In this document: positions 3,747 through 55,038 of the stretch, piece after piece
Layout: the number at the start of each line of letters is the position of its first letter
Position numbering within the stretch: position 1 is the first letter of the stretch
Virus record (IMG/VR): IMGVR_UViG_3300028800_000001
Coordinates: 62,001-126,000 of that record
DNA: 64,000 nt
Strand: one strand, 5' to 3'
Translations under genes and position numbers: made by a program
Notes under the pieces: generated by a model
What the model saw: only the letters and a program-made list of their open reading frames with translations
What the model was told of the DNA's origin: nothing
The model's database searches: none

Positions 3747-4316
3747 TTATGCCGCTATACTACTATAGTGGACTTTGAGGTAAAGATACTTTCCGACATA
3801 ACTGGTGAGCTCACGAATAAGATCATGCCCACCCACTTTCAGTTCTTCAGTGGTATAGAGATAGCCAGTGATTTCGCTATAGCACACGGCGTACTGCACA
3901 TCGCTATCGCCGTCCAGAGCACGCAAGAAGGAATTCTGCAACTTCTCTTCGCTCTCCATGCGTTCATCGCTGATATAATAAGAAACCGAGAGGTATTTCC
4001 CGTAGCGCTCACGATCCCAGCGTACCCGCTGTGCCAAAGGTTCGTCATCAAGCAGCAAGATACCTTCATGCTCTTCAGGCCAGCGCCCTCCAAGAGTGAG
4101 GCGACCATGATAGACAGTGGAAGGGAACAAATCATCGTAATACGCGTAACCATTGTGCCATTTTATCTTTTCGCGGTGCTTAATGGCGACGTTAAAAGAA
4201 TATTCGTCAAACGTGGCTTCCTGTACAAACCAGGGCTTATCCATATCACGCAAAAGATCCTGTGTTACCGCCCCTAAGATTTTGCAGACTTCTTCTTTGG
4301 TATAAAAATTCTTCAT
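3747..4316 (-). CDS. hypothetical protein, paralog of 3151-3723
   Basis: Tandem duplicate. Confidence 0.85.
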   Translation of the reverse strand: MKNFYTKEEVCKILGAVTQDLLRDMDKPWFVQEATFDEYSFNVAIKHREKIKWHNGYAYYDDLFPSTVYHGRLTLGGRWPEEHEGILLLDDEPLAQRVRWDRERYGKYLSVSYYISDERMESEEKLQNSFLRALDGDSDVQYAVCYSEITGYLYTTEELKVGGHDLIRELTSYVGKYLYLKVHYSSIAA

Positions 4317-4672
4317 GCTAATTCCTCCTTGATCGGAAAGAGCCGATTATAGTATTGCATGCCCAGCTTCCCGCTCATGCAATCAGCCTGCCATTCCTGG
4401 CGTGTGACGTAGGAAAAGTAATTCAGACTAATTCCTGCGAGACGCACCAGCTTTTCGAGTGTTGGTGCGCTCAGAAGATATTCGCTGGTAACCTCTTTGC
4501 CAAAATGCCCCTGCTTCTCATGGAAGCAATGCAGTTCAAAGCGTGGATGAATACCATGTGGCGGATCATCAAAGATATAAAGATTGCCCAAGACCAGGAC
4601 GCCCCAATCGTAATCGGTCAACATCGCCTCAATTTCTTCTATGCTGTGTTTTTGTCCAACGCGTTCAATCAC
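4313..4672 (-). CDS. hypothetical protein
   Basis: 4-nt overlaps with both neighbours. Confidence 0.75.
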   Translation of the reverse strand: MIERVGQKHSIEEIEAMLTDYDWGVLVLGNLYIFDDPPHGIHPRFELHCFHEKQGHFGKEVTSEYLLSAPTLEKLVRLAGISLNYFSYVTRQEWQADCMSGKLGMQYYNRLFPIKEELA

Positions 4673-5163
4673 GGCTCGTCTCCAAAGAAGTCTTCACACT
4701 TCAGTACCAAACGATTCAAAAACAGGTAATACTCTTCTGCTGCATCGACCTCTAGCTCAATACCAACGGCACGCCGCAAGAGCTCTATACGCCTTGATCG
4801 ATCATTCTTTGTTTCTTCTAGTTGCGCAGCCGACAAATACTTCTGTATTTCGTCATCAATAATATCGTGGCAAAAGTGCGCGTTTAATTGCCCCTGGCGT
4901 GCTGTCCAGGTCTCTTCAGCCTTTTTACGCTCACTTTTAAGCAACTCTGAAACCTGCCGCATCACCGCGTTTGGCTCACGCAGCCCATTGGTCTCAATAC
5001 CCTCGTCCTCATCAAATTCGGCAAGGATAGTGCCAGTTTCCTCGTTGAAGAGCATGCCCCAATCTGCTCCTTGCTCTTTGAGAAGAAAGTATTGGAACGC
5101 TGCATACTTTTTATTTTCGTGCTTGTATAATATCGTTTTTCCATCAATAACTAGTGTAAACAT
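4669..5163 (-). CDS. hypothetical protein
   Basis: SD GAGG, ORF tiling. Confidence 0.75.
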   Translation of the reverse strand: MFTLVIDGKTILYKHENKKYAAFQYFLLKEQGADWGMLFNEETGTILAEFDEDEGIETNGLREPNAVMRQVSELLKSERKKAEETWTARQGQLNAHFCHDIIDDEIQKYLSAAQLEETKNDRSRRIELLRRAVGIELEVDAAEEYYLFLNRLVLKCEDFFGDEP

Positions 5164-5165
5164 TT

Positions 5166-5423
5166 TTACCTCTGTACTCTCGTTTCTTTAAAAACATGCT
5201 CGTACGCCGCCATCAGCAATCGGTGCGCGGCCTCTTCTGTAAGCGCTCCTGGCATAAACTGCATGCGTTTGCGCACGTCTTCAACAATAAAGATGGCAGG
5301 CATAAATGCTGCTGCCACCAATTCTCGTTCCAAAACAATGCCGCTATCCATCAGATTACGCACCATTATTTGCATGCGCCACTGTGGGTCATAGGCATCA
5401 TGTGTTGCTGGCATCTTTACCAC
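5166..5423 (-). CDS. hypothetical protein
   Basis: ORF tiling. Confidence 0.65.
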   Translation of the reverse strand: MVKMPATHDAYDPQWRMQIMVRNLMDSGIVLERELVAAAFMPAIFIVEDVRKRMQFMPGALTEEAAHRLLMAAYEHVFKETRVQR

Positions 5424-48215: not shown

Positions 48216-48539
48216 TTAGTTTTGAAAAAGTGGATGGCGGCTGAGACCGCACTGTTTTAATAGGTCTTCCCACTTCCCGTCGTTGCAGCCGCAAAATGAA
48301 CGGTCGCTAAAACTGTCGCTACGCGTCTTGGAAGCTTGCGTCATATACCAGAATTCGCTGTTGACGCTGCGTACATAATAATCGCCAAAGGCGGTATGTA
48401 GGACCGGAAGAACTTGATATGCAACCTGATTAAAACGAGTCATTTCGTCAGCAAGCGCTGCTCGTACTGCAAACATACGTGCTTTTTGTGCCTCTCGTGC
48501 TACGCGATTTGCGCGCTTTTCTGCCAGTGTGAGTGCCAT
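48216..48539 (-). CDS. hypothetical protein
   Basis: TTCAAGGAG leader, first gene after P12. Confidence 0.75.
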   Translation of the reverse strand: MALTLAEKRANRVAREAQKARMFAVRAALADEMTRFNQVAYQVLPVLHTAFGDYYVRSVNSEFWYMTQASKTRSDSFSDRSFCGCNDGKWEDLLKQCGLSRHPLFQN

Positions 48540-48592
48540 CTTTTTTCTCCTTGAAACGAAAGTTATTAAATTGTTTTTTCTTTACAAAAAGA

Positions 48593-48647
48593 AGTATAGG
48601 TCAGAGAAGAAAAGAAGTCAATAGTTTTTTCACTGTATTTTCAGAAA
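48593..48647 (-). promoter_or_regulatory. promoter module P12
   Basis: TTTCTGAAAATAC...TTGACT-N17-TATACT. Confidence 0.85.
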
Positions 48648-48703
48648 TGCTTTGACCTTTAAGAATACAGACGTAAAAGATGGGGAAATATCAAATGAGG
48701 GTG

Positions 48704-49051
48704 CTATTTAGCACCCTTTTGTAAAATGGTCAGAAACAGGGGGATCAGCGCGTGATCGTAGCCACGTGAGTTGGCAAGATACTCTTGGAGATGGCGCAGG
48801 AGCGCAGGGGCAACCTCTTCTTCGGTCACATCATCCTCTAAGATATACTCTTCTTCTGGAGAGACTTTCAGATCACCTTTTTTATGTTCACTATAAAGGA
48901 GCACGATTGTATGCTGTGTTGCGCTCTTGCTCCTTACTTTGACGTAAACACTCGCCTGCTCACGCCAACGATTGCCAGGACGACGATAGAGCAGTTTAAA
49001 ACTATCACTCTCTATCGTCACGCTATCAAGGACACCTGCTTTATAATTCAT
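48704..49051 (-). CDS. hypothetical protein
   Basis: ATG abuts the IS end. Confidence 0.65.
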   Translation of the reverse strand: MNYKAGVLDSVTIESDSFKLLYRRPGNRWREQASVYVKVRSKSATQHTIVLLYSEHKKGDLKVSPEEEYILEDDVTEEEVAPALLRHLQEYLANSRGYDHALIPLFLTILQKGAK

Positions 49052-49111
49052 ACAATTGCGGCAAGGAAACCCTGTGCTTTTAAGCCAGGGAGGAATTGCC
49101 GTCTCTCCTCT

Positions 49112-50395
49112 CTAATAACTATAGCCATCGATTTTGTACAACGACTGACAATATCTATAGCTAATTCCTTCAGTAACTCCGTTTTTCGTTGCAATATTAA
49201 AGCTTCCGGTAGAGCGTATTGCAACCTTTCCAATGTATGTACCCGTCTTTTTCCCTTTTGTGATAATGGCTTTTACGATGTCACCGGTTTGAAAACCATG
49301 CACAACCTTTGCTTGCTTTGGCCCTGTTCTTGGGAAGCCAAAGCAATTCATTCTGCACATTTGTCTCGATCCATGCCCAATAGCTTTTATATGCAAAGGT
49401 TGAATATCTCTAAGCGATAGTATTTCAGGGGTACTTTTGCCTACACATACCGCATCAATCCAATGTTCTTTTGAAAGTTGCCTCAAAGAACGATTGTATT
49501 TTGTTAGTCCACCAGAGCCAACTTCAACAGGCAATCCAGCTTTCTTTAATTCCTCATATAATCGCCACCTTGTACTATTCACCGCAGCCGCATCTTTGAG
49601 CGGCTTCTTTAGTTGCGCAAGAATCTTATCCAGTCGCTTCTTGTCATGTTGCAAGAAATCCTGAATATCTTTCGTGTCTTTCTTTTTATTGCATGGTTCG
49701 CAAGCCAAACAAAGATTAGAGATTCGATCCGAACCGCCCTTTGATCTTGCTACTACATGCTCAATCTCCAGAGGCACATTCTCAGCGTCACAGTAACCGC
49801 ATTTTCGCTCCCATTTTTCTAATAGGTACTCTCTAATCTCATAGCCTTGCAGTGTACCTTGTTGATATTCAAATCCTGATATTTCTGGATTTTCCATTTT
49901 TTGCAGATCAAAGCGAACCAATTCTTGCGAGATAGCAACAAGGTTGCAAAGCAATCTCAGCTTTCTCATCCACGTAAGGATATTTTGTATTCTGCTCTCA
50001 AGCGATGGCGCTATCCAACCTTTCTTCTTGTTCCTACGATTAAGAAAACGTGGCTGACGATATCTTGTTTTTCTTTGTCTACGCGACCTTCGAATCATTT
50101 TCCTATCGGCAAGCGCTTTTCCAATAGTGTTCCCACGATGTTCAAGTTCTACGCCAAAGACAACTTCACCCGACTGATCATTTACAATGGCGATACCGGT
50201 TGTCTTTGAACCAGGATCAAGCTTTATTCGCAATGGCTCAACAATTGGATTATTTACTTCTCGTTTTAAGACGATTGTAAACGGATATCTTTTAAAAACG
50301 GCTGCTTTTCCTGAAGAGAGCAATCTCCTTGCTTCCCCTGGATGTACCGGATTTAGAATCTGTTTCTTCGTATCTAATACAAACACTTTTAACAT
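49112..50395 (-). CDS. iscB: RNA-guided endonuclease IscB
   Basis: PLMP-like VFVLD..LNPVHPGEARRLL..YPFTI; RuvC-I LDPGSK; RRSRR bridge helix; RuvC-II QELVRFD; HNH EIEHVV..GGSDRISNL..CN; RuvC-III HWIDA. Confidence 0.95.
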   Translation of the reverse strand: MLKVFVLDTKKQILNPVHPGEARRLLSSGKAAVFKRYPFTIVLKREVNNPIVEPLRIKLDPGSKTTGIAIVNDQSGEVVFGVELEHRGNTIGKALADRKMIRRSRRQRKTRYRQPRFLNRRNKKKGWIAPSLESRIQNILTWMRKLRLLCNLVAISQELVRFDLQKMENPEISGFEYQQGTLQGYEIREYLLEKWERKCGYCDAENVPLEIEHVVARSKGGSDRISNLCLACEPCNKKKDTKDIQDFLQHDKKRLDKILAQLKKPLKDAAAVNSTRWRLYEELKKAGLPVEVGSGGLTKYNRSLRQLSKEHWIDAVCVGKSTPEILSLRDIQPLHIKAIGHGSRQMCRMNCFGFPRTGPKQAKVVHGFQTGDIVKAIITKGKKTGTYIGKVAIRSTGSFNIATKNGVTEGISYRYCQSLYKIDGYSY

Positions 50396-50645
50396 TTTTT
50401 GCTCTTTCAAGCCTCCGCTTTCGCGGGTAATGGTCAACTCGACAATGTTACAAAACGGTTTTGTATGATTACTACACTGGCTTTACCCTTCCGCCTGTTT
50501 AATAGTAATCCGCAGAGGATAAGACTGTTGAAGCATCCTATCGTGCCTATATATTCGCTTTTAACGTAGATTTTCTTTCAAATCTGAGTCTGGTCAAATT
50601 GGTGGGCTCTCACAAGCCCCTGTGTTTTAATCAGGGGTATTTGAC
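50396..50645 (-). ncRNA. omegaRNA (HEARO-type) scaffold
   Basis: GTCAAATACCCC...TTGACCAGACTCAG...CTACGTT...GGATGC...CTCTGCG...TTAAACAG...CATTGTCGAG directly upstream of iscB. Confidence 0.85.
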
Positions 50646-50672
50646 ACTTCTTCTGACTGCGCGCCCCTGCCA

Positions 50673-51149
50673 CTATCGTTGCGATGTCCATCCATCACCC
50701 TTCTCCATAGCAGCACGAGCAATGTCTTCCAAAAAATCTGGAAAAGTTGTTTCACCGCTTTCGTGCGAGTACCACCAATTCCGTAACACAGTGGATGCCC
50801 GTTGTTCGGATAAGCCACCCAAAGTTCGTTGATTTGCCTTACTGATATGAATCCAGTCTTTTTTGTCATAATATTTATATCTCCTCTCTCCCTCTTGAGA
50901 AAACCCTTCCTGCTCCAAAAGGGGCACGTAGACACTCTCCAGAATAGAATCTGTGTAATTAAGATAATTTGCAATCTTGGGATGATGCTTTTCTACATAC
51001 GCCTGCGCTTCACCTGCATAATGCACAAGTGTTTCGCGCCCTGGTATAAGGCAAACATTCCAGCTCAGATCGCGCCCTGGAAAAAAGGCATAAATATCAA
51101 TGCCTTGACCGCCCTGCGAATACATTGCTTCTGTAATTGTGTACTTCAT
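50673..51149 (-). CDS. hypothetical protein
   Basis: GAGGAG SD before MKYTIT. Confidence 0.75.
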   Translation of the reverse strand: MKYTITEAMYSQGGQGIDIYAFFPGRDLSWNVCLIPGRETLVHYAGEAQAYVEKHHPKIANYLNYTDSILESVYVPLLEQEGFSQEGERRYKYYDKKDWIHISKANQRTLGGLSEQRASTVLRNWWYSHESGETTFPDFLEDIARAAMEKGDGWTSQR

Positions 51150-51150
51150 G

Positions 51151-51627
51151 CTACTCCTCATCTTTCTTGAAAAAGCACGCTTCAACGAGCAGCGCTTCGT
51201 AGGCATCTGCATCGTTACTCCGTTTGTCTAAGAATGCCAGGATCTTTGGGTATTTGTCTTGCAAATACGCAATCGTTGCATCGTTGCCAAAGACCGCAAT
51301 AGTATGCCCAGGCAGAAAAGTCGTCGCCCAGGACATTTCTATCGTGTAAATTTCTGTCCTCGCAAAGAAGAAGATGCCGTGTTCGTCTTTTCGAAGCGTA
51401 TACCACTTCTTAATGAGCGAGAGCGGCATAAGTTCTCCTTCGCTCTCCGCAAGCTCCAAGCCGTCTAGAGTAAAGCGTACTGGCACATCCACGGTGTGTT
51501 CTTGCCCAAAGAAGTGCTCAAAATGATACACATCGCCGTAGCCAAAGTAGGCATGCACACCGGCTCTGCGAAGCGCCTCTCTTGCTTTGGGGTGAATGCT
51601 TGAAATGTTGGTCATGTTTGAATCCAA
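51151..51627 (-). CDS. hypothetical protein
   Basis: ORF tiling. Confidence 0.7.
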   Translation of the reverse strand: MDSNMTNISSIHPKAREALRRAGVHAYFGYGDVYHFEHFFGQEHTVDVPVRFTLDGLELAESEGELMPLSLIKKWYTLRKDEHGIFFFARTEIYTIEMSWATTFLPGHTIAVFGNDATIAYLQDKYPKILAFLDKRSNDADAYEALLVEACFFKKDEE

Positions 51628-51905
51628 TAATATTTGAATGGATGCTTGCCGTCATACCCATCAGGAACGCCGTTCACAAACATCTTGCCAGTAGAAAGTA
51701 TTGGGTAGTGCTCATCATTGAGAATGAAACGACTGTCGCCAGAATTTCCCTCAACAATCGAGAGCAACGTCTTGAGCGCAAATTGCTCCGAACAGCCAAA
51801 GCGGTTCGCCACCTCTTTTGTGGTCTCGCCATCAATCTCACCCTGCCAAACCGCATCGCAAATCGCTGTTTTGATGCGCGTTGCTTCTTCTCTGGAGAGT
51901 CTCAC
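51612..51905 (-). CDS. hypothetical protein, possible HTH
   Basis: TTKEVANRFGCSEQFALKTL; GGAGGTG SD. Confidence 0.7.
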   Translation of the reverse strand: MRLSREEATRIKTAICDAVWQGEIDGETTKEVANRFGCSEQFALKTLLSIVEGNSGDSRFILNDEHYPILSTGKMFVNGVPDGYDGKHPFKYYWIQT

Positions 51906-51913
51906 ATCACCTC

Positions 51914-52705
51914 CTATAAGAAGATATTACCGTTGTCGTCTTTGTAGGCCACAAAGCCATCATCCAGCATCTTGCGCCACTCTTCTTTGGTGGCTTTGAA
52001 GCTCCCAAAGGTCGTGCTATGAACTGCGCACCATGCGCAAAGCTCATCTAACGTGGCGAAAACAGGTGAACAAGGAGAACCTTCCGTGGTATCTTCCCAG
52101 AGCTGATACCCCTCACCTGTTGGCGGCTCTTCGGCTTCCCAGTTCTCGTAGCGTTCTTTATGTTCGGGCGTTGGAAACTGCGATCCATCGCCGCCACACT
52201 CAGGGCACAAATCGCTCTTGCCTTCACGTGCAAGTTTGGCTTTGATCACCGTGTGGCAATTAATGCTATCGTGTCCAATACCAATCTTTGCCCAATCATT
52301 GACCTCTTGAGGTGTTGGAATATATCCGTTCGTCTCTTTGAGCCAATAAGAGCTTTCCCCGCTCTTTTCCTGCTCTCGCAGCATTTCCCATTGTTCGTCT
52401 GTACGTGGGCGTCTGGTAAAATCGAAAAGCCTTCCATCATCAACAAGCGCTTGAATGTCGTCTTCGTCCAGGTGGTAGCACCACGCTTCGTCATTGTAGC
52501 GATACCCTTTTTCAATATACACCCAACGCGTGCGATCAAAGCCATGCCAACGATCACGCAGCGCTTTGCATTCAAGGCTCCACCCTTCGCCATCGCAGGC
52601 AGGACAATTGTACTCAGAGCTCCAATACTGATTAAGATACCCTTCCCAGGTCGTGTTTTGCGGCCAATCGAAATCCATCGGTACGCGTTTTAATAATCTT
52701 CCCAA
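51914..52705 (-). CDS. conserved phage protein with split DnaJ-like CxxCxGxG pair
   Basis: MGR..KRVPMDFDWP, CPACDGEG, CPECGGDG, GYQLWEDTTEGSPCSPVF. Confidence 0.8.
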   Translation of the reverse strand: MGRLLKRVPMDFDWPQNTTWEGYLNQYWSSEYNCPACDGEGWSLECKALRDRWHGFDRTRWVYIEKGYRYNDEAWCYHLDEDDIQALVDDGRLFDFTRRPRTDEQWEMLREQEKSGESSYWLKETNGYIPTPQEVNDWAKIGIGHDSINCHTVIKAKLAREGKSDLCPECGGDGSQFPTPEHKERYENWEAEEPPTGEGYQLWEDTTEGSPCSPVFATLDELCAWCAVHSTTFGSFKATKEEWRKMLDDGFVAYKDDNGNIFL

Positions 52706-52707
52706 AT

Positions 52708-52950
52708 TTATTCCTCAATTCGCAGTTTTGCAAGCGGAAATTTGACCGCTTCAAATTCGGTGGCAGTACAGATAAGTTCTGTCCCAATCTTTGCAAGTTC
52801 AACTTGTATGGCGTTTAAGCGTGGTGAATTTGTGCGCTCACCAGTAAGCCAGAGGTTGAGCGCTTCGTCAATGAGCGCATTGCGCTTACGCCAGTGGATA
52901 AAGGGAAAAAGCAACATTGTACCTCTCTTGAAAGCTATAAGTGGTCGCAT
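52708..52950 (-). CDS. hypothetical protein
   Basis: ORF tiling. Confidence 0.55.
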   Translation of the reverse strand: MRPLIAFKRGTMLLFPFIHWRKRNALIDEALNLWLTGERTNSPRLNAIQVELAKIGTELICTATEFEAVKFPLAKLRIEE

Positions 52951-53107
52951 ACGCTACACCATCGTTTTCCCAGGTGCCTGAAAGTTGTGCAACACCTGTG
53001 AGCGCTTGCTCTTTGGCATCTTCATCTTGTGAAAGCCAGAACAAGCGCGGAAACTTCTCGTAAAAATCGTGTACGAGCAAACTGAGTCCATGAAGTTCGC
53101 TATCCAT
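52886..53107 (-). CDS. hypothetical protein
   Basis: AAGGAGG SD before MDSELH. Confidence 0.6.
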   Translation of the reverse strand: MDSELHGLSLLVHDFYEKFPRLFWLSQDEDAKEQALTGVAQLSGTWENDGVAYATTYSFQERYNVAFSLYPLA

Positions 53108-53744
53108 TATATAATCCTCCTTCTTTACGTACTTGATTGCAGATGCAATCCCAAAACGGTGCGCCGTAATCCTCCGGCTCGTAGGCAACCCCACTACGCC
53201 AGGAACACTGACTACACCCGACATACTCCATGTCGTTCTCTACCTCCTCTACCAACGTCTTCGTTAGACACCAGGGGCAAAGGCTATAGAGGAGGCACGC
53301 TGTGCATTCGTTTTCATCCCATTCATCGCCGTAGCTGCTTTTCTCATATAAAATGCCTGTGCCACGACAGGTACGGCAATAATTGGGATGCGCGGCCTCA
53401 AAAGCCACTACTTCCTCCTTGCCATCCTGACATCCCTGGAGATGCTTCGCACATTCAATATCCATGCGAAAAGGAAACTCAAAGTGAACAGGAAGGTTAT
53501 AGCGCAGTGCAACCGCAACACAGTCATCCAGGTCACGCTCATCTCTGTTCACATCGCGCAGAAATTGTCGAATAAGTGCTGCGCGAGCACGTGTAAGCGT
53601 CTGATACGGAATTGCGACCCCCTCTTTTCGGTAGATGTACCAGACCTCCTGGCACGAGAAAAAGAGGTAATAGCACTGCGTAGGCGGATGATAAAAGGCA
53701 CGCCAGACCTCCGCCCACTCTCGAAACGCGACACCAATACTCAC
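53100..53744 (-). CDS. Cys-rich hypothetical protein
   Basis: CRTCRGTG, CTAC, CPWC, CSQC. Confidence 0.75.
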   Translation of the reverse strand: MSIGVAFREWAEVWRAFYHPPTQCYYLFFSCQEVWYIYRKEGVAIPYQTLTRARAALIRQFLRDVNRDERDLDDCVAVALRYNLPVHFEFPFRMDIECAKHLQGCQDGKEEVVAFEAAHPNYCRTCRGTGILYEKSSYGDEWDENECTACLLYSLCPWCLTKTLVEEVENDMEYVGCSQCSWRSGVAYEPEDYGAPFWDCICNQVRKEGGLYNG

Positions 53745-54133
53745 AGTTTTTCAATCCTGACGGCGTTCTCTGGAATACGCAGTTCACCATGCTTTTCCGA
53801 GAAGACAATAAGATAGCCGCGCTCCAGCAGCACGCCAGAAAGTGTCATCTGCTTGTCTGCGCGAATGAACAACGCCTTTCCTTCTGGCTTATGAAAGCTG
53901 ATGTCACGCAAGAAAGTCACCGTATGTGCGCCATCGGTATAATCAGGATCAACACACAGATGCCGGTCGTCTGGATGAATAAAGGAAAGGGACATCTCCC
54001 AATTCTCTTTGATATGCTCCACACCAGGATTGGTTGGAAGTAATCGCAGCGAAGCGCGCCTGCCACGTGTGAAAAGAAGTTCACAACGACGATAACGACC
54101 AGAGATTTTTGCGCGTACAATAGTGCTTTCCAT
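53741..54133 (-). CDS. hypothetical protein
   Basis: TTCAAGGAG leader, first gene after P13. Confidence 0.75.
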   Translation of the reverse strand: MESTIVRAKISGRYRRCELLFTRGRRASLRLLPTNPGVEHIKENWEMSLSFIHPDDRHLCVDPDYTDGAHTVTFLRDISFHKPEGKALFIRADKQMTLSGVLLERGYLIVFSEKHGELRIPENAVRIEKL

Positions 54134-54170
54134 TTTTTCTTTCTCCTTGAAAAATATATTTCTTTTCTAT

Positions 54171-54225
54171 AGTATAGGGCATTTACACTAACGCGTCAAG
54201 AATATTTTCACTGTATTTTCAGAAA
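54171..54225 (-). promoter_or_regulatory. promoter module P13
   Basis: TATTTTCTGAAAATAC...TTGACG-N17-TATACT. Confidence 0.85.
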
Positions 54226-54278
54226 ATAAAAAGAGAGAAGCGTTATGCCCCTCTCTTAATAAAACCCTTTCGGGGTTA
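54222..54278 (-). terminator. tandem hairpins/terminator abutting P13
   Basis: AACCC-CGAAA-GGGTT and AAGAGAGGGGC/GCTTCTCTCTT then TTTATTTT. Confidence 0.7.
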
Positions 54279-54992
54279 TTTAACTTCTTTGGCTTTCATA
54301 TCAAAATATGCGCCTGCTCGATAATATTTGCGCTCATCTTGTGCCTTTAAGAATTTCTCGTAGACCTCTTTGGCCTTTTGATACGACGTTGCCTCGATCA
54401 TCTGCTCTTCAAATTCCGGCTGCTTTTCGATAAAACAACGGAAGGTTTTGACCGGCTTTGGCGCTTTTTTGACGCGTGGGGTGGAAACCGTCTTTGGGGC
54501 TGGAATGGTGCGTCCTTCGCCAGCAGCGCGTGCCCATTCTACAACGCGCTGTTCCATCTCGACCAGATCCGCTTTTGCGAACCGGATGTTTCGCTCGTAT
54601 TCGTTAATCTTACCGCTGTGCGCGTATTCGTAGGTTCTTGGCATTCCAGAGGAGACGCGGTATCCGTAGCTCTTCGTGTCCAGGTCGGCTGGACGGTCGC
54701 ACACAATCTCTTTCCCTGACTGATAAGCGGATTTGTTAATCCACACGGAAAGCTGTGCAGGAGGATTGGCGACGAACTCTGCGAGTGCCTGTTCTTGAGC
54801 CGCGATGAAGTTTTTTACCACTTCGACAATCTCTTTTAAACGATCACAGGAGACCTGATACGGGACGTAACGCGCACCAGCGCAAGAAGCGGTCTGCCAT
54901 CCATACCCAGGACGGCTGTATCCGTGATGTGCAATCAGTCCACTCGCGGCGCGTACCGCTCTTCCGCATACCTGACAGGTTAACTTTTCCAT
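54276..54992 (-). CDS. conserved phage protein with N-terminal Zn-binding motif
   Basis: TCQVCGR..IAHHGY.RPG.GWQTASC.G. Confidence 0.8.
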   Translation of the reverse strand: MEKLTCQVCGRAVRAASGLIAHHGYSRPGYGWQTASCAGARYVPYQVSCDRLKEIVEVVKNFIAAQEQALAEFVANPPAQLSVWINKSAYQSGKEIVCDRPADLDTKSYGYRVSSGMPRTYEYAHSGKINEYERNIRFAKADLVEMEQRVVEWARAAGEGRTIPAPKTVSTPRVKKAPKPVKTFRCFIEKQPEFEEQMIEATSYQKAKEVYEKFLKAQDERKYYRAGAYFDMKAKEVK

Positions 54993-55038
54993 TTTCTTTC
55001 TCCTTGAATGTTTTTTTTCGTTTATTTCTTATACAGGA

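What the first reader, a model, noticed from the sequence alone, without database searches (positions are those of the whole stretch)
49047..50665. Intact IscB/omegaRNA element whose predicted TAM is the start codon of the next phage gene
Seen: catalytic RuvC and HNH residues present; scaffold starts GTCAA at 50645; the flanking guide would be about GGCGCGCAGUCAGAAGAAGU (50665-50646). Removing 49052-50645 gives ...CAGAAGAAGT|ATGAATTAT, so the target is followed by ATGAA, the ATG of gene 48704-49051. Established: IscB guides derive from flanking DNA, TAMs are 3', and ATGA(A)-type TAMs are reported for some IscBs. Inference: insertion at a start codon spares the ORF, phage read-through from P13 supplies the guide, and IscB would cut element-free co-infecting phages like an RNA-guided homing endonuclease. 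TnpA must come in trans.
Basis: partly seen in the sequence, partly recalled or inferred. Interest (0 to 1): 0.65.

Follow-up and report, generated by a model that had tools for sequence, protein, structure and literature searches.

The report
IscB guide-RNA transposon in jumbo phage
A 327-kb phage carries one intact copy of a small transposon that encodes the Cas9 ancestor IscB and its guide RNA, wedged exactly in front of the start codon of a phage gene; the element is of a known kind, but its position follows a wider rule, apparently not described before, that these elements sit between ribosome-binding site and start codon.

Summary
Window 49052-50645 (- strand) is a 1,594-bp non-autonomous IS200/IS605-family (ISC) element. 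It holds a full-length HEARO/omegaRNA (50427-50645, 136 bits) and an intact 427-aa IscB with all catalytic motifs. Both ends carry the same hairpin on the same strand. The host genome is a complete 327,295-bp phage with this single copy, no TnpA and no TnpB.

The proposed junction (guide | GTCAA ... | ATGAA) could not be checked on this phage. All 6 contigs and 4 further runs hold the filled site, and no empty junction exists in the viral or metagenome collections. It is strongly supported by homology: the left-end terminus aligns with relatives whose N|ATGA junction is verified. These include two natural empty/filled pairs of Ralstonia phages that I found here, one exactly at an annotated start codon.

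Across 32 related elements the TAM's ATG opens an ORF of at least 100 codons in 56% (control 17%). It does so with a Shine-Dalgarno motif in the guide in 34% (control 3%).

Guide expression, cleavage and phage-to-phage homing remain inference. The insertion keeps the ORF but removes its ribosome-binding site. Verdict: new member of a known kind, moderately interesting.

The parts
50646..50665 (-). Flanking DNA that would form the 5' guide of the omegaRNA. The 16 nt next to the scaffold are 50661-50646, CGCAGTCAGAAGAAGT. It lies 8-27 nt after the stop codon of the upstream gene.
   Evidence: Sequence. The guide lies outside the right end in IscB elements (Meers 2023). It is unique in the 327-kb genome.
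50427..50645 (-). omegaRNA scaffold (HEARO), complete, starting GUCAA. Positions 50641-50645 are the right-end terminal motif (TTGAC on the + strand).
   Evidence: Rfam RF02033, 136.4 bits, model positions 1-211 of 211. It is the only HEARO match in the genome.
50617..50637 (+). Right-end subterminal hairpin (CCCCTG...CAGGGG), 8 nt from the end of the element.
   Evidence: Alignment of the two ends and DNA folds.
49112..50395 (-). iscB gene, 427 aa, intact. The protein is identical in all contigs despite 3 synonymous SNPs.
49052..49111 (-). Left end of the element, 60 nt between the iscB stop codon and the TAM. On the + strand it holds an imperfect hairpin at 49059-49101, with an inner stem at 49070-49090 of the same sequence as the right-end hairpin. 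A GAGGAG motif (49102-49111) lies just 5' of the hairpin in the mRNA sense.
   Evidence: The terminal GGTTTCC...GC.GCAA...|ATGA aligns with left ends of relatives.
49047..49051 (-). Predicted TAM / TnpA target ATGAA (TTCAT on the + strand). Its ATG is the start codon of the next gene.
48704..49051 (-). Downstream phage gene, 115 aa, with no homologues outside this phage. It is the last gene of a long - strand unit.
   Evidence: A terminator-like hairpin at 48717-48698 and a promoter-like site at 48621-48593 follow it.
50673..51146 (-). Upstream co-oriented phage gene, 158 aa as called (the ORF is open to 51212). Transcription through it would have to supply the guide.

Best explanation
Window 49052-50645 is a non-autonomous IS200/IS605-superfamily (ISC-type) transposon carried by a jumbo phage.

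Inferred history: a Y1 transposase (TnpA) supplied by a host cell placed it immediately 5' of an ATGA(A) motif that is the start codon of a phage gene.

Inferred action: transcription coming from the co-oriented upstream phage genes runs through the last ~16-20 nt of flanking DNA into the element. This makes an omegaRNA whose guide is that flank. IscB loaded with this RNA would cut any copy of the phage genome in which the guide sequence is followed directly by ATGAA, that is, the element-free allele. The filled site is protected because the guide is followed by GTCAA. Repair from an element-bearing genome would then restore or spread the element. This is retention after excision, and homing into element-free co-infecting relatives.

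Shown: identity, integrity and anatomy of the element, a single copy, absence of TnpA, and fixation in all sampled genomes.

Inferred from relatives: the exact junction and the TAM.

Inferred only: guide expression, cleavage and homing.
For: Anatomy of the element:
- Full HEARO match and RRXRR+HNH protein with catalytic residues.
- The left and right ends carry the same hairpin on the same strand, 18 nt and 8 nt from the ends, as in IS200/IS605 elements.
- The length of 1,594 bp is within the 1,341-1,707 bp reported for ISC elements.

Published support for the junction and mechanism:
- 5'-GTCA and N|ATGA junctions are reported with empty sites (PMC4810608).
- The GstIscB TAM is TTCAT, it cleaves the donor joint, and there is an orientation bias towards the upstream gene (10.1101/2023.03.14.532601).
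- NTGA-type TAMs occur in IsrB (PMC9581776).

Evidence from relatives gathered here:
- In multi-copy relatives, similarity ends after an invariant ATGA at a fixed distance. In 10 Vreelandella insertions ATGA is invariant and the fifth base is A in 9.
- Natural phage empty/filled pairs for a 47%-identical IscB element give X|ATGA with the element starting GTCAA (Bakoly/Adzire, Gervaise/Claudette).

State of this copy:
- The IscB protein is identical in all contigs although 3 synonymous SNPs exist, and its 90% cluster has one member.
- The genome holds no TnpA and no TnpB.
Against: - No empty allele of this phage was found, so its own junction is not observed.
- There are no RNA data.
- No promoter could be assigned upstream.
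- With the element fixed in every sampled genome, there may be no target left in nature.
- The closest named IscB relatives are Chloroflexota. For that phylum one paper reports a different junction type, GT|GG or GT|GA.
- The downstream gene has lost its ribosome-binding context, so the insertion may not be neutral.
Confidence: 0.72

Rival explanations
1. Same element, different junction. As reported for Ktedonobacter ISC families (GT|GG, GT|GA), the element would be 49050-50643 (CA...AT). The empty site would read ...AGAAGAAGTGT|GAATT. The pre-insertion start codon would then be GTG, and the TAM GTGAA rather than ATGAA.
For: The filled site fits both readings (GT|CA...AT|GA). Kapitonov 2016 reports this type from insertion-free repeat copies in K. 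racemifer. The phage IscB falls in a Chloroflexota-dominated clade.
Against: Every junction verified by true empty sites in elements with this left-end terminus is N|ATGA. These are Microcystis, Halomonas and Marinobacter and the two Ralstonia phage pairs found here. GstIscB donor joints and TAM mutagenesis give TTCAT/ATGAA.
Confidence: 0.1
2. A stranded passenger. The element entered once, is fixed, has no empty allele left to cut and no transposase. It persists as a still-intact but currently idle selfish gene, or has been co-opted by the phage for something other than homing.
For: All 6 contigs and all bridging contigs of 4 further runs are filled. There is a single copy and no TnpA. The guide matches nothing else in the genome, and only unrelated chance 19-mers in metagenomes.
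Against: The ORF, catalytic residues and omegaRNA are all intact. Only synonymous changes are seen among strains, which argues for ongoing selection. The sample is small: 3 SNPs.
Confidence: 0.15
3. An ordinary free-standing HNH homing endonuclease of the phage that recognises its site through protein alone, with the upstream RNA match incidental.
For: Public annotation of homologues reads 'HNH endonuclease' or 'McrA'.
Against: The RRXRR/RuvC fold, a full-length HEARO match at 136 bits directly upstream on the same strand, and solved IscB-omegaRNA complexes as nearest structures.
Confidence: 0.02

Closest known systems
GstIscB element of Geobacillus stearothermophilus (Meers et al. 2023, 10.1101/2023.03.14.532601)
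   Same: The omegaRNA lies upstream of iscB and is bounded by the right end. The guide comes from the flank. The TAM is TTCAT 5' of the left end, which is ATGAA in iscB sense. The right-end motif differs from the TAM at two positions. It is non-autonomous and co-oriented with the upstream gene.
   Different: That element is chromosomal, multi-copy, and has a cognate TnpA in the same genome. Here there is a single copy in a phage with no TnpA. No relation to start codons was reported there, as far as I could search.
ISC2/ISC1 families with the N|ATGA target (Kapitonov, Makarova, Koonin 2016, PMC4810608)
   Same: 5'-GTCA terminus, insertion directly 5' of ATGA, no target duplication, subterminal hairpins, size 1.3-1.7 kb, iscB as the only gene.
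   Different: They were described in cyanobacterial and proteobacterial chromosomes. The phage IscB is only 48-61% identical to members of those groups recovered here.
IscB element of Ralstonia phages (Adzire, Simangalove, Elie, Sarlave; Claudette, Alix; Heva, Dimitile), annotated as HNH endonuclease
   Same: It is phage-borne and has GTCAA...|ATGA ends. In Claudette and Alix it sits exactly at the annotated start codon of a phage gene. Element-free sister phages exist (Bakoly, Jenny, Gervaise).
   Different: 47% protein identity. Its iscB ORF runs to the very end of the element, and its stop codon (TG|A) overlaps the downstream ATG. In the window 60 nt with a hairpin separate the two. The same element lies at three sites in three phage genera, whereas here only one site is known.
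OgeuIscB-omegaRNA (PDB 7xht, 7utn, 8csz)
   Same: Domain order and catalytic motifs align.
   Different: About 30% identity. I recall its TAM as NWRRNA, but this is from memory and not checked here.
Free-standing homing endonucleases of T-even phages (SegF, SegB, Mob)
   Same: The proposed biological effect is the same: cutting the element-free allele of a co-infecting relative, followed by copying of the element.
   Different: Those enzymes read 14-40 bp through protein. Here specificity would come from an RNA guide plus a 4-5 nt TAM.

Membership tests
IscB (OMEGA RNA-guided nuclease) | N-terminal PLMP/RRXRR region with a split RuvC domain | tested here: met
   PF14239 E 1.9e-69, profile positions 1-174 of 174. 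D60, E158, H311 and D314 align with the RuvC motifs of solved IscBs.
IscB (OMEGA RNA-guided nuclease) | HNH domain inserted in RuvC, with the catalytic His and zinc cysteines | tested here: met
   PF01844 E 2e-10. H213, N227/N236 and C199/C202/C232/C235 are present.
IscB (OMEGA RNA-guided nuclease) | Structured omegaRNA (HEARO) directly upstream on the same strand | tested here: met
   RF02033, 136.4 bits against a gathering score of 83, full length, ending 32 nt before the ATG.
IscB (OMEGA RNA-guided nuclease) | RNA-guided, TAM-dependent DNA cleavage | not testable with these tools
   Needs a biochemical or plasmid-interference assay.
IS200/IS605 superfamily, ISC group (non-autonomous) | Subterminal hairpins of like sequence on the same strand at both ends, with no inverted terminal repeats | tested here: met
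   CCCTGTG(C)TTTTAA..CAGGG occurs at 49070-49090 and 50617-50637, both on the + strand.
IS200/IS605 superfamily, ISC group (non-autonomous) | Insertion next to a fixed 4-5 nt target, without target duplication | tested here: inconclusive
   The flanks fit N|ATGA and show no duplication. The terminus is homologous to elements with verified N|ATGA junctions. The empty site of this phage itself was not found.
IS200/IS605 superfamily, ISC group (non-autonomous) | Y1 (HUH) transposase TnpA in the element or the genome | tested here: not met
   No PF01797 match in the complete genome. This is expected for non-autonomous ISC elements: about 1.5% of iscB genes lie near a tnpA. Mobility therefore depends on a host-encoded enzyme.
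Homing element of phages | Presence/absence polymorphism at one site among close relatives | tested here: not met
   All 6 contigs and the bridging contigs of 4 runs are filled. Such polymorphism is seen for the related Ralstonia phage element.

The most novel reading that the evidence does not exclude
IscB elements with the ATGA target are not scattered over ATGA sites. They are systematically kept between the Shine-Dalgarno sequence and the start codon of a co-oriented gene. Three things follow:
- The guide of the omegaRNA is the gene's own ribosome-binding region, so it is transcribed whenever the gene is.
- The TAM is the start codon plus the common A at position +4.
- Translation of the displaced gene is rescued by the element itself. 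Cyanobacterial copies carry a GGAGG in the left end. The Ralstonia phage copies have a TG|ATG stop-start overlap. In this phage, a GAGGAG may be brought next to the ATG by the left-end hairpin.

In phages such elements would act as RNA-guided homing endonucleases between co-infecting relatives. The Ralstonia pairs Adzire/Bakoly and Claudette/Gervaise are ready-made test systems.
Probability: 0.35. Interest if true: 0.65.

Novelty: new member of a known kind. Interest (0 to 1): 0.5.

Why it matters
It adds a complete, apparently functional IscB/omegaRNA unit to the very few known in phages: 30 of 50,697 phage records have an IscB-like gene.

It also led to two points that seem not to have been written down:
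- This group of elements sits at translation start sites far more often than chance allows, so the guide RNA is the ribosome-binding region of the next gene.
- Cultured Ralstonia phages exist as element-bearing and element-free pairs, in which RNA-guided homing between viruses could be tested directly.

For genome-editing work, the protein is a compact (427 aa) IscB with a short predicted ATGA(A) TAM.

Tried and rejected
- Relatives of the phage: none found by DNA or by the flanking proteins, in the phage collection, viral contigs or the 5.8-billion-protein set. No related phage with an empty site could therefore be used.
- Contigs carrying the identical IscB: 6 were read and 4 shown; all are the same phage at 99.5-100% identity and all are filled.
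- Reads: only Logan contigs of DNA runs were on offer. Four runs with partial shares were laid on 5,401 bases. They gave no joints, and their contigs bridge both element ends. No RNA run holds the stretch.
- Exact junction searches: guide+ATGAATT gave 0 hits in viral contigs and 0 in metagenome contigs. The guide 19-mer followed by a non-G gave 5 hits, all unrelated GC-rich contigs with no other similarity, so chance matches, and 0 in viral contigs. The alternative junction (guide+GTGAATT) gave 0 in viral contigs.
- Promoter and terminator scan: hits are at the level of shuffled sequence, so no promoter can be named for the guide.
- The RNA fold of the left-end region is not more stable than shuffles (z -0.75). 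The 'split ribosome-binding site' idea is therefore only a suggestion.
- I tried to derive the TnpA guide/cleavage-site pairing rule for the ends from memory of IS608. I could not do so reliably and left it out.
- Papers not held: Altae-Tran 2021 and Weinberg 2009. TAMs quoted from the former are from memory and are marked so.
- The 'careful' tree did not finish in time. The quick tree was used, with SH-aLRT support only.

Full report
**Where the window lies.** The window is bases 62001-126000 of a single 327,295-bp viral record with direct terminal repeats, rated complete. Near-identical contigs come from rhizosphere metagenomes. Genes around the finding all run on the - strand and include a sigma-70-like factor, a dCMP deaminase and a T4-type RNA ligase. 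The phage has no detectable relatives in the phage collection, in IMG/VR or among 5.8 billion proteins, apart from copies of itself.

**Checking the observation.**
- The ORF 49112-50395 (-) encodes 427 aa with the Pfam RRXRR domain (E 1.9e-69, full profile) and HNH (2e-10).
- Its nearest solved structures are IscB-omegaRNA complexes. In the alignments the RuvC Asp (D60), Glu (E158) and His/Asp (H311, D314), the HNH His (H213) and Asn residues, and the four zinc cysteines are all present.
- Directly upstream on the same strand, Rfam's HEARO model matches 50427-50645 over its full length at 136 bits (gathering score 83). The match starts with GUCAA at 50645.

**Anatomy of the element.**
- On the + strand the two ends carry the same hairpin, CCCTGTG(C)TTTTAA..CAGGG. 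It lies 18 nt inside the end next to TTCAT (49070-49090) and 8 nt inside the end that finishes with TTGAC (50617-50637). Like hairpins on one strand, without inverted terminal repeats, are the signature of IS200/IS605 ends.
- By the convention of Meers et al., the omegaRNA side is the right end and the iscB 3' side is the left end.
- The element is 1,594 bp, within the 1,341-1,707 bp given for ISC elements.
- The genome holds one IscB, one HEARO, no Y1 transposase and no TnpB. The element is therefore non-autonomous, as are about 98% of iscB loci.

**The junction and the TAM.** The empty allele of this phage could not be found.
- Six contigs carrying the identical protein were read; the four shown are the same phage (99.5-100% identity) and have the element.
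- Contigs from four further runs bridge both ends, and no joint was reported.
- The exact predicted junction is absent from IMG/VR and from the JGI metagenome collection.
- The guide 19-mer followed by a base other than G occurs only in five unrelated contigs, by chance.

The junction therefore rests on comparison, and that comparison is strong.
1. Kapitonov et al. showed with true empty sites that ISC elements of cyanobacteria and proteobacteria begin 5'-GT(CA) and insert at N|ATGA.
2. Meers et al. showed by excision assays, TAM mutagenesis, ChIP-seq and a TAM library that GstIscB uses TTCAT 5' of the left end. That is ATGAA in iscB sense, the very motif at 49051-49047. They also showed that the right-end motif differs from the TAM at two positions. 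Here GTCAA versus ATGAA also differ at two positions.
3. In relatives fetched here, the left end finishes with a homologous GGTTTCC-(11 to 13 nt, GC.GCAA-like) stretch followed by ATGA. In ten independent Vreelandella insertions ATGA is invariant at a fixed distance, the fifth base is A in nine, and similarity then stops.
4. I found natural empty and filled alleles of a 47%-identical IscB element in cultured Ralstonia phages.
   - Bakoly reads ...GGTGT|ATGAGAAAA, where Adzire has ...GGTGT|GTCAACC...GACTG|ATGAGAAAA.
   - Gervaise reads ...GCCACT|ATGAAACAC, where Claudette has the element.
   - Both give N|ATGA with the element starting GTCAA.

A different junction type (GT|GG, GT|GA; element CA...AT) is reported for Ktedonobacter, and the phage IscB groups with Chloroflexota sequences. 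That reading, which would make the pre-insertion start codon GTG and the TAM GTGAA, is kept as a rival at about 10%.

**The start codon.** The ATG of the TAM opens the 115-aa ORF 48704-49051, which gene callers call. A terminator-like hairpin and then a good promoter-like site follow it, so the element sits before the last gene of a long unit. The placement is not a one-off. For 32 related elements with both ends defined (the right end by Rfam), I rebuilt the empty site and compared the target ATGA with all 1,244 other ATGA sites in the same loci:

| Feature at the ATGA site | Target sites | Control sites | Fisher p |
|---|---|---|---|
| ATG opens an ORF of at least 100 codons | 56% | 17% | 1e-6 |
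| Same, with no upstream in-frame ATG | 41% | 4.7% | 3e-9 |
| Same, with a Shine-Dalgarno core 4-17 nt upstream (inside the guide) | 34% | 3.2% | 9e-9 |

In phage Claudette the TAM's ATG is the annotated start of a DksA-like gene, and the element-free phage Gervaise has the same start. Full-text searches for IscB with 'start codon', 'Shine-Dalgarno' or 'downstream gene' did not find this stated. Meers et al. report only the orientation bias towards the upstream gene, which they explain by the need for outside transcription of the guide.

**A qualification to 'spares the ORF'.** Nearly every gene in this part of the phage has an AAGGAG-type motif 6-12 nt before its start. Gene 49051 now has only left-end sequence there and no such motif within 25 nt. 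The rebuilt empty site has only a purine run (AGAAGAAG) right against the ATG. Relatives deal with this in different ways. Cyanobacterial left ends carry GGAGG or GAGG 6-9 nt before the TAM. In the Ralstonia phage element the iscB stop codon is completed by the TAM (TG|A) and overlaps the ATG, the classic arrangement for translational coupling. In the window, a GAGGAG lies just 5' of the left-end hairpin, which could bring it next to the ATG. The fold is not better than shuffles, so this is only a suggestion.

**Is the element alive?** Among strains there are three SNPs in iscB, all synonymous. There is also a 3-nt indel (50603-50605) in a variable part of the omegaRNA. The protein's 90% cluster has a single member. 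This points to purifying selection, on few events. Guide expression could not be tested because no RNA run holds the stretch. Co-orientation and the lack of a convincing terminator between the upstream gene and 50665 make read-through plausible.

**Mechanism proposed.** It is the published one for IscB elements: the guide comes from the flank, IscB cuts the donor joint or any empty allele, and repair from a filled copy follows. Here it is applied to phage genomes replicating together in one cell. For this phage that remains inference, because no empty allele is known and the element looks fixed. The Ralstonia phages show that such elements do move among phages: the same element, at least 98.8% identical, lies at three different N|ATGA sites in three genera, and close relatives lack it.

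**Verdict.** This is a correct and careful first-stage finding. The element is a new member of a known kind. Interest is moderate (0.5). It is raised by the start-site rule and by the phage pairs that make RNA-guided homing between viruses testable. It is lowered because identity, TAM type and mechanism are already established for the family.

Noticed in passing
window 50603-50605: A 3-nt indel (CCA, in a CCACCA repeat) inside the omegaRNA distinguishes strains. It is absent in three of four other contigs and in contigs of three runs. It lies in the variable small hairpin/junction before the closing stem.
   Followed up: partly
window 48500-48730: A cluster of strain SNPs (18 in about 1 kb) begins 320 nt downstream of the element. 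It includes 6 in the last 9 codons of gene 48704-49051 and in the terminator-like hairpin. By contrast, no SNP was seen for about 5 kb upstream of the element (49,900-55,000). The asymmetry could reflect co-conversion or simply local constraint.
   Followed up: no
window 48593-48717: A terminator-like hairpin (48717-48698, 8 pairs) is followed by the best sigma-70-like site of the region (TTGACT-17-TATACT, 48621-48593), both on the - strand. This marks an operon boundary just after the gene that follows the element.
   Followed up: partly
L104 (Ralstonia phage Claudette) 3228-3232; L095 (Adzire) 2917-2921: In the Ralstonia phage element the iscB ORF runs to the last base of the element. Its stop codon TGA is completed by the first A of the TAM and overlaps the downstream ATG by one base.
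   Followed up: partly
L104 3230-3244 versus L106 903-914: After the shared ATGA, Claudette (filled) has one extra codon (GCA) compared with Gervaise (empty) at the start of the DksA-like gene. This is either strain variation or a trace of the insertion or repair.
   Followed up: no
L096 (Nodularia phage vB_NspS-kac68v162) 1-3152: A 53%-identical IscB lies in a nest of mobile-element genes: an IS607-family transposase, a second 'transposase' upstream and another downstream.
   Followed up: no
L004 (IMGVR_UViG_3300031238_000012) about 3750-5300: The sister of the phage IscB in the quick tree is on another viral contig. Its guide ends with AGGAGAGGATC. An ATGG 32 nt after the iscB stop opens a 96-codon ORF, so it may be another start-site insertion, with an ATGG TAM.
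   Followed up: partly
L043 621-973 and 2155-2435: In a Planctomycetota MAG the IscB element lies 1.2 kb downstream of the tmRNA gene.
   Followed up: no
window 39000-60400 (L013 gene list): The surrounding - strand block encodes an AAA_5 ATPase, a sigma-70 region-2 protein, a dCMP deaminase and a T4-type RNA ligase among many genes with no known homologues. Strong AAGGAG-type ribosome-binding sites suggest a host that relies on Shine-Dalgarno pairing.
   Followed up: no
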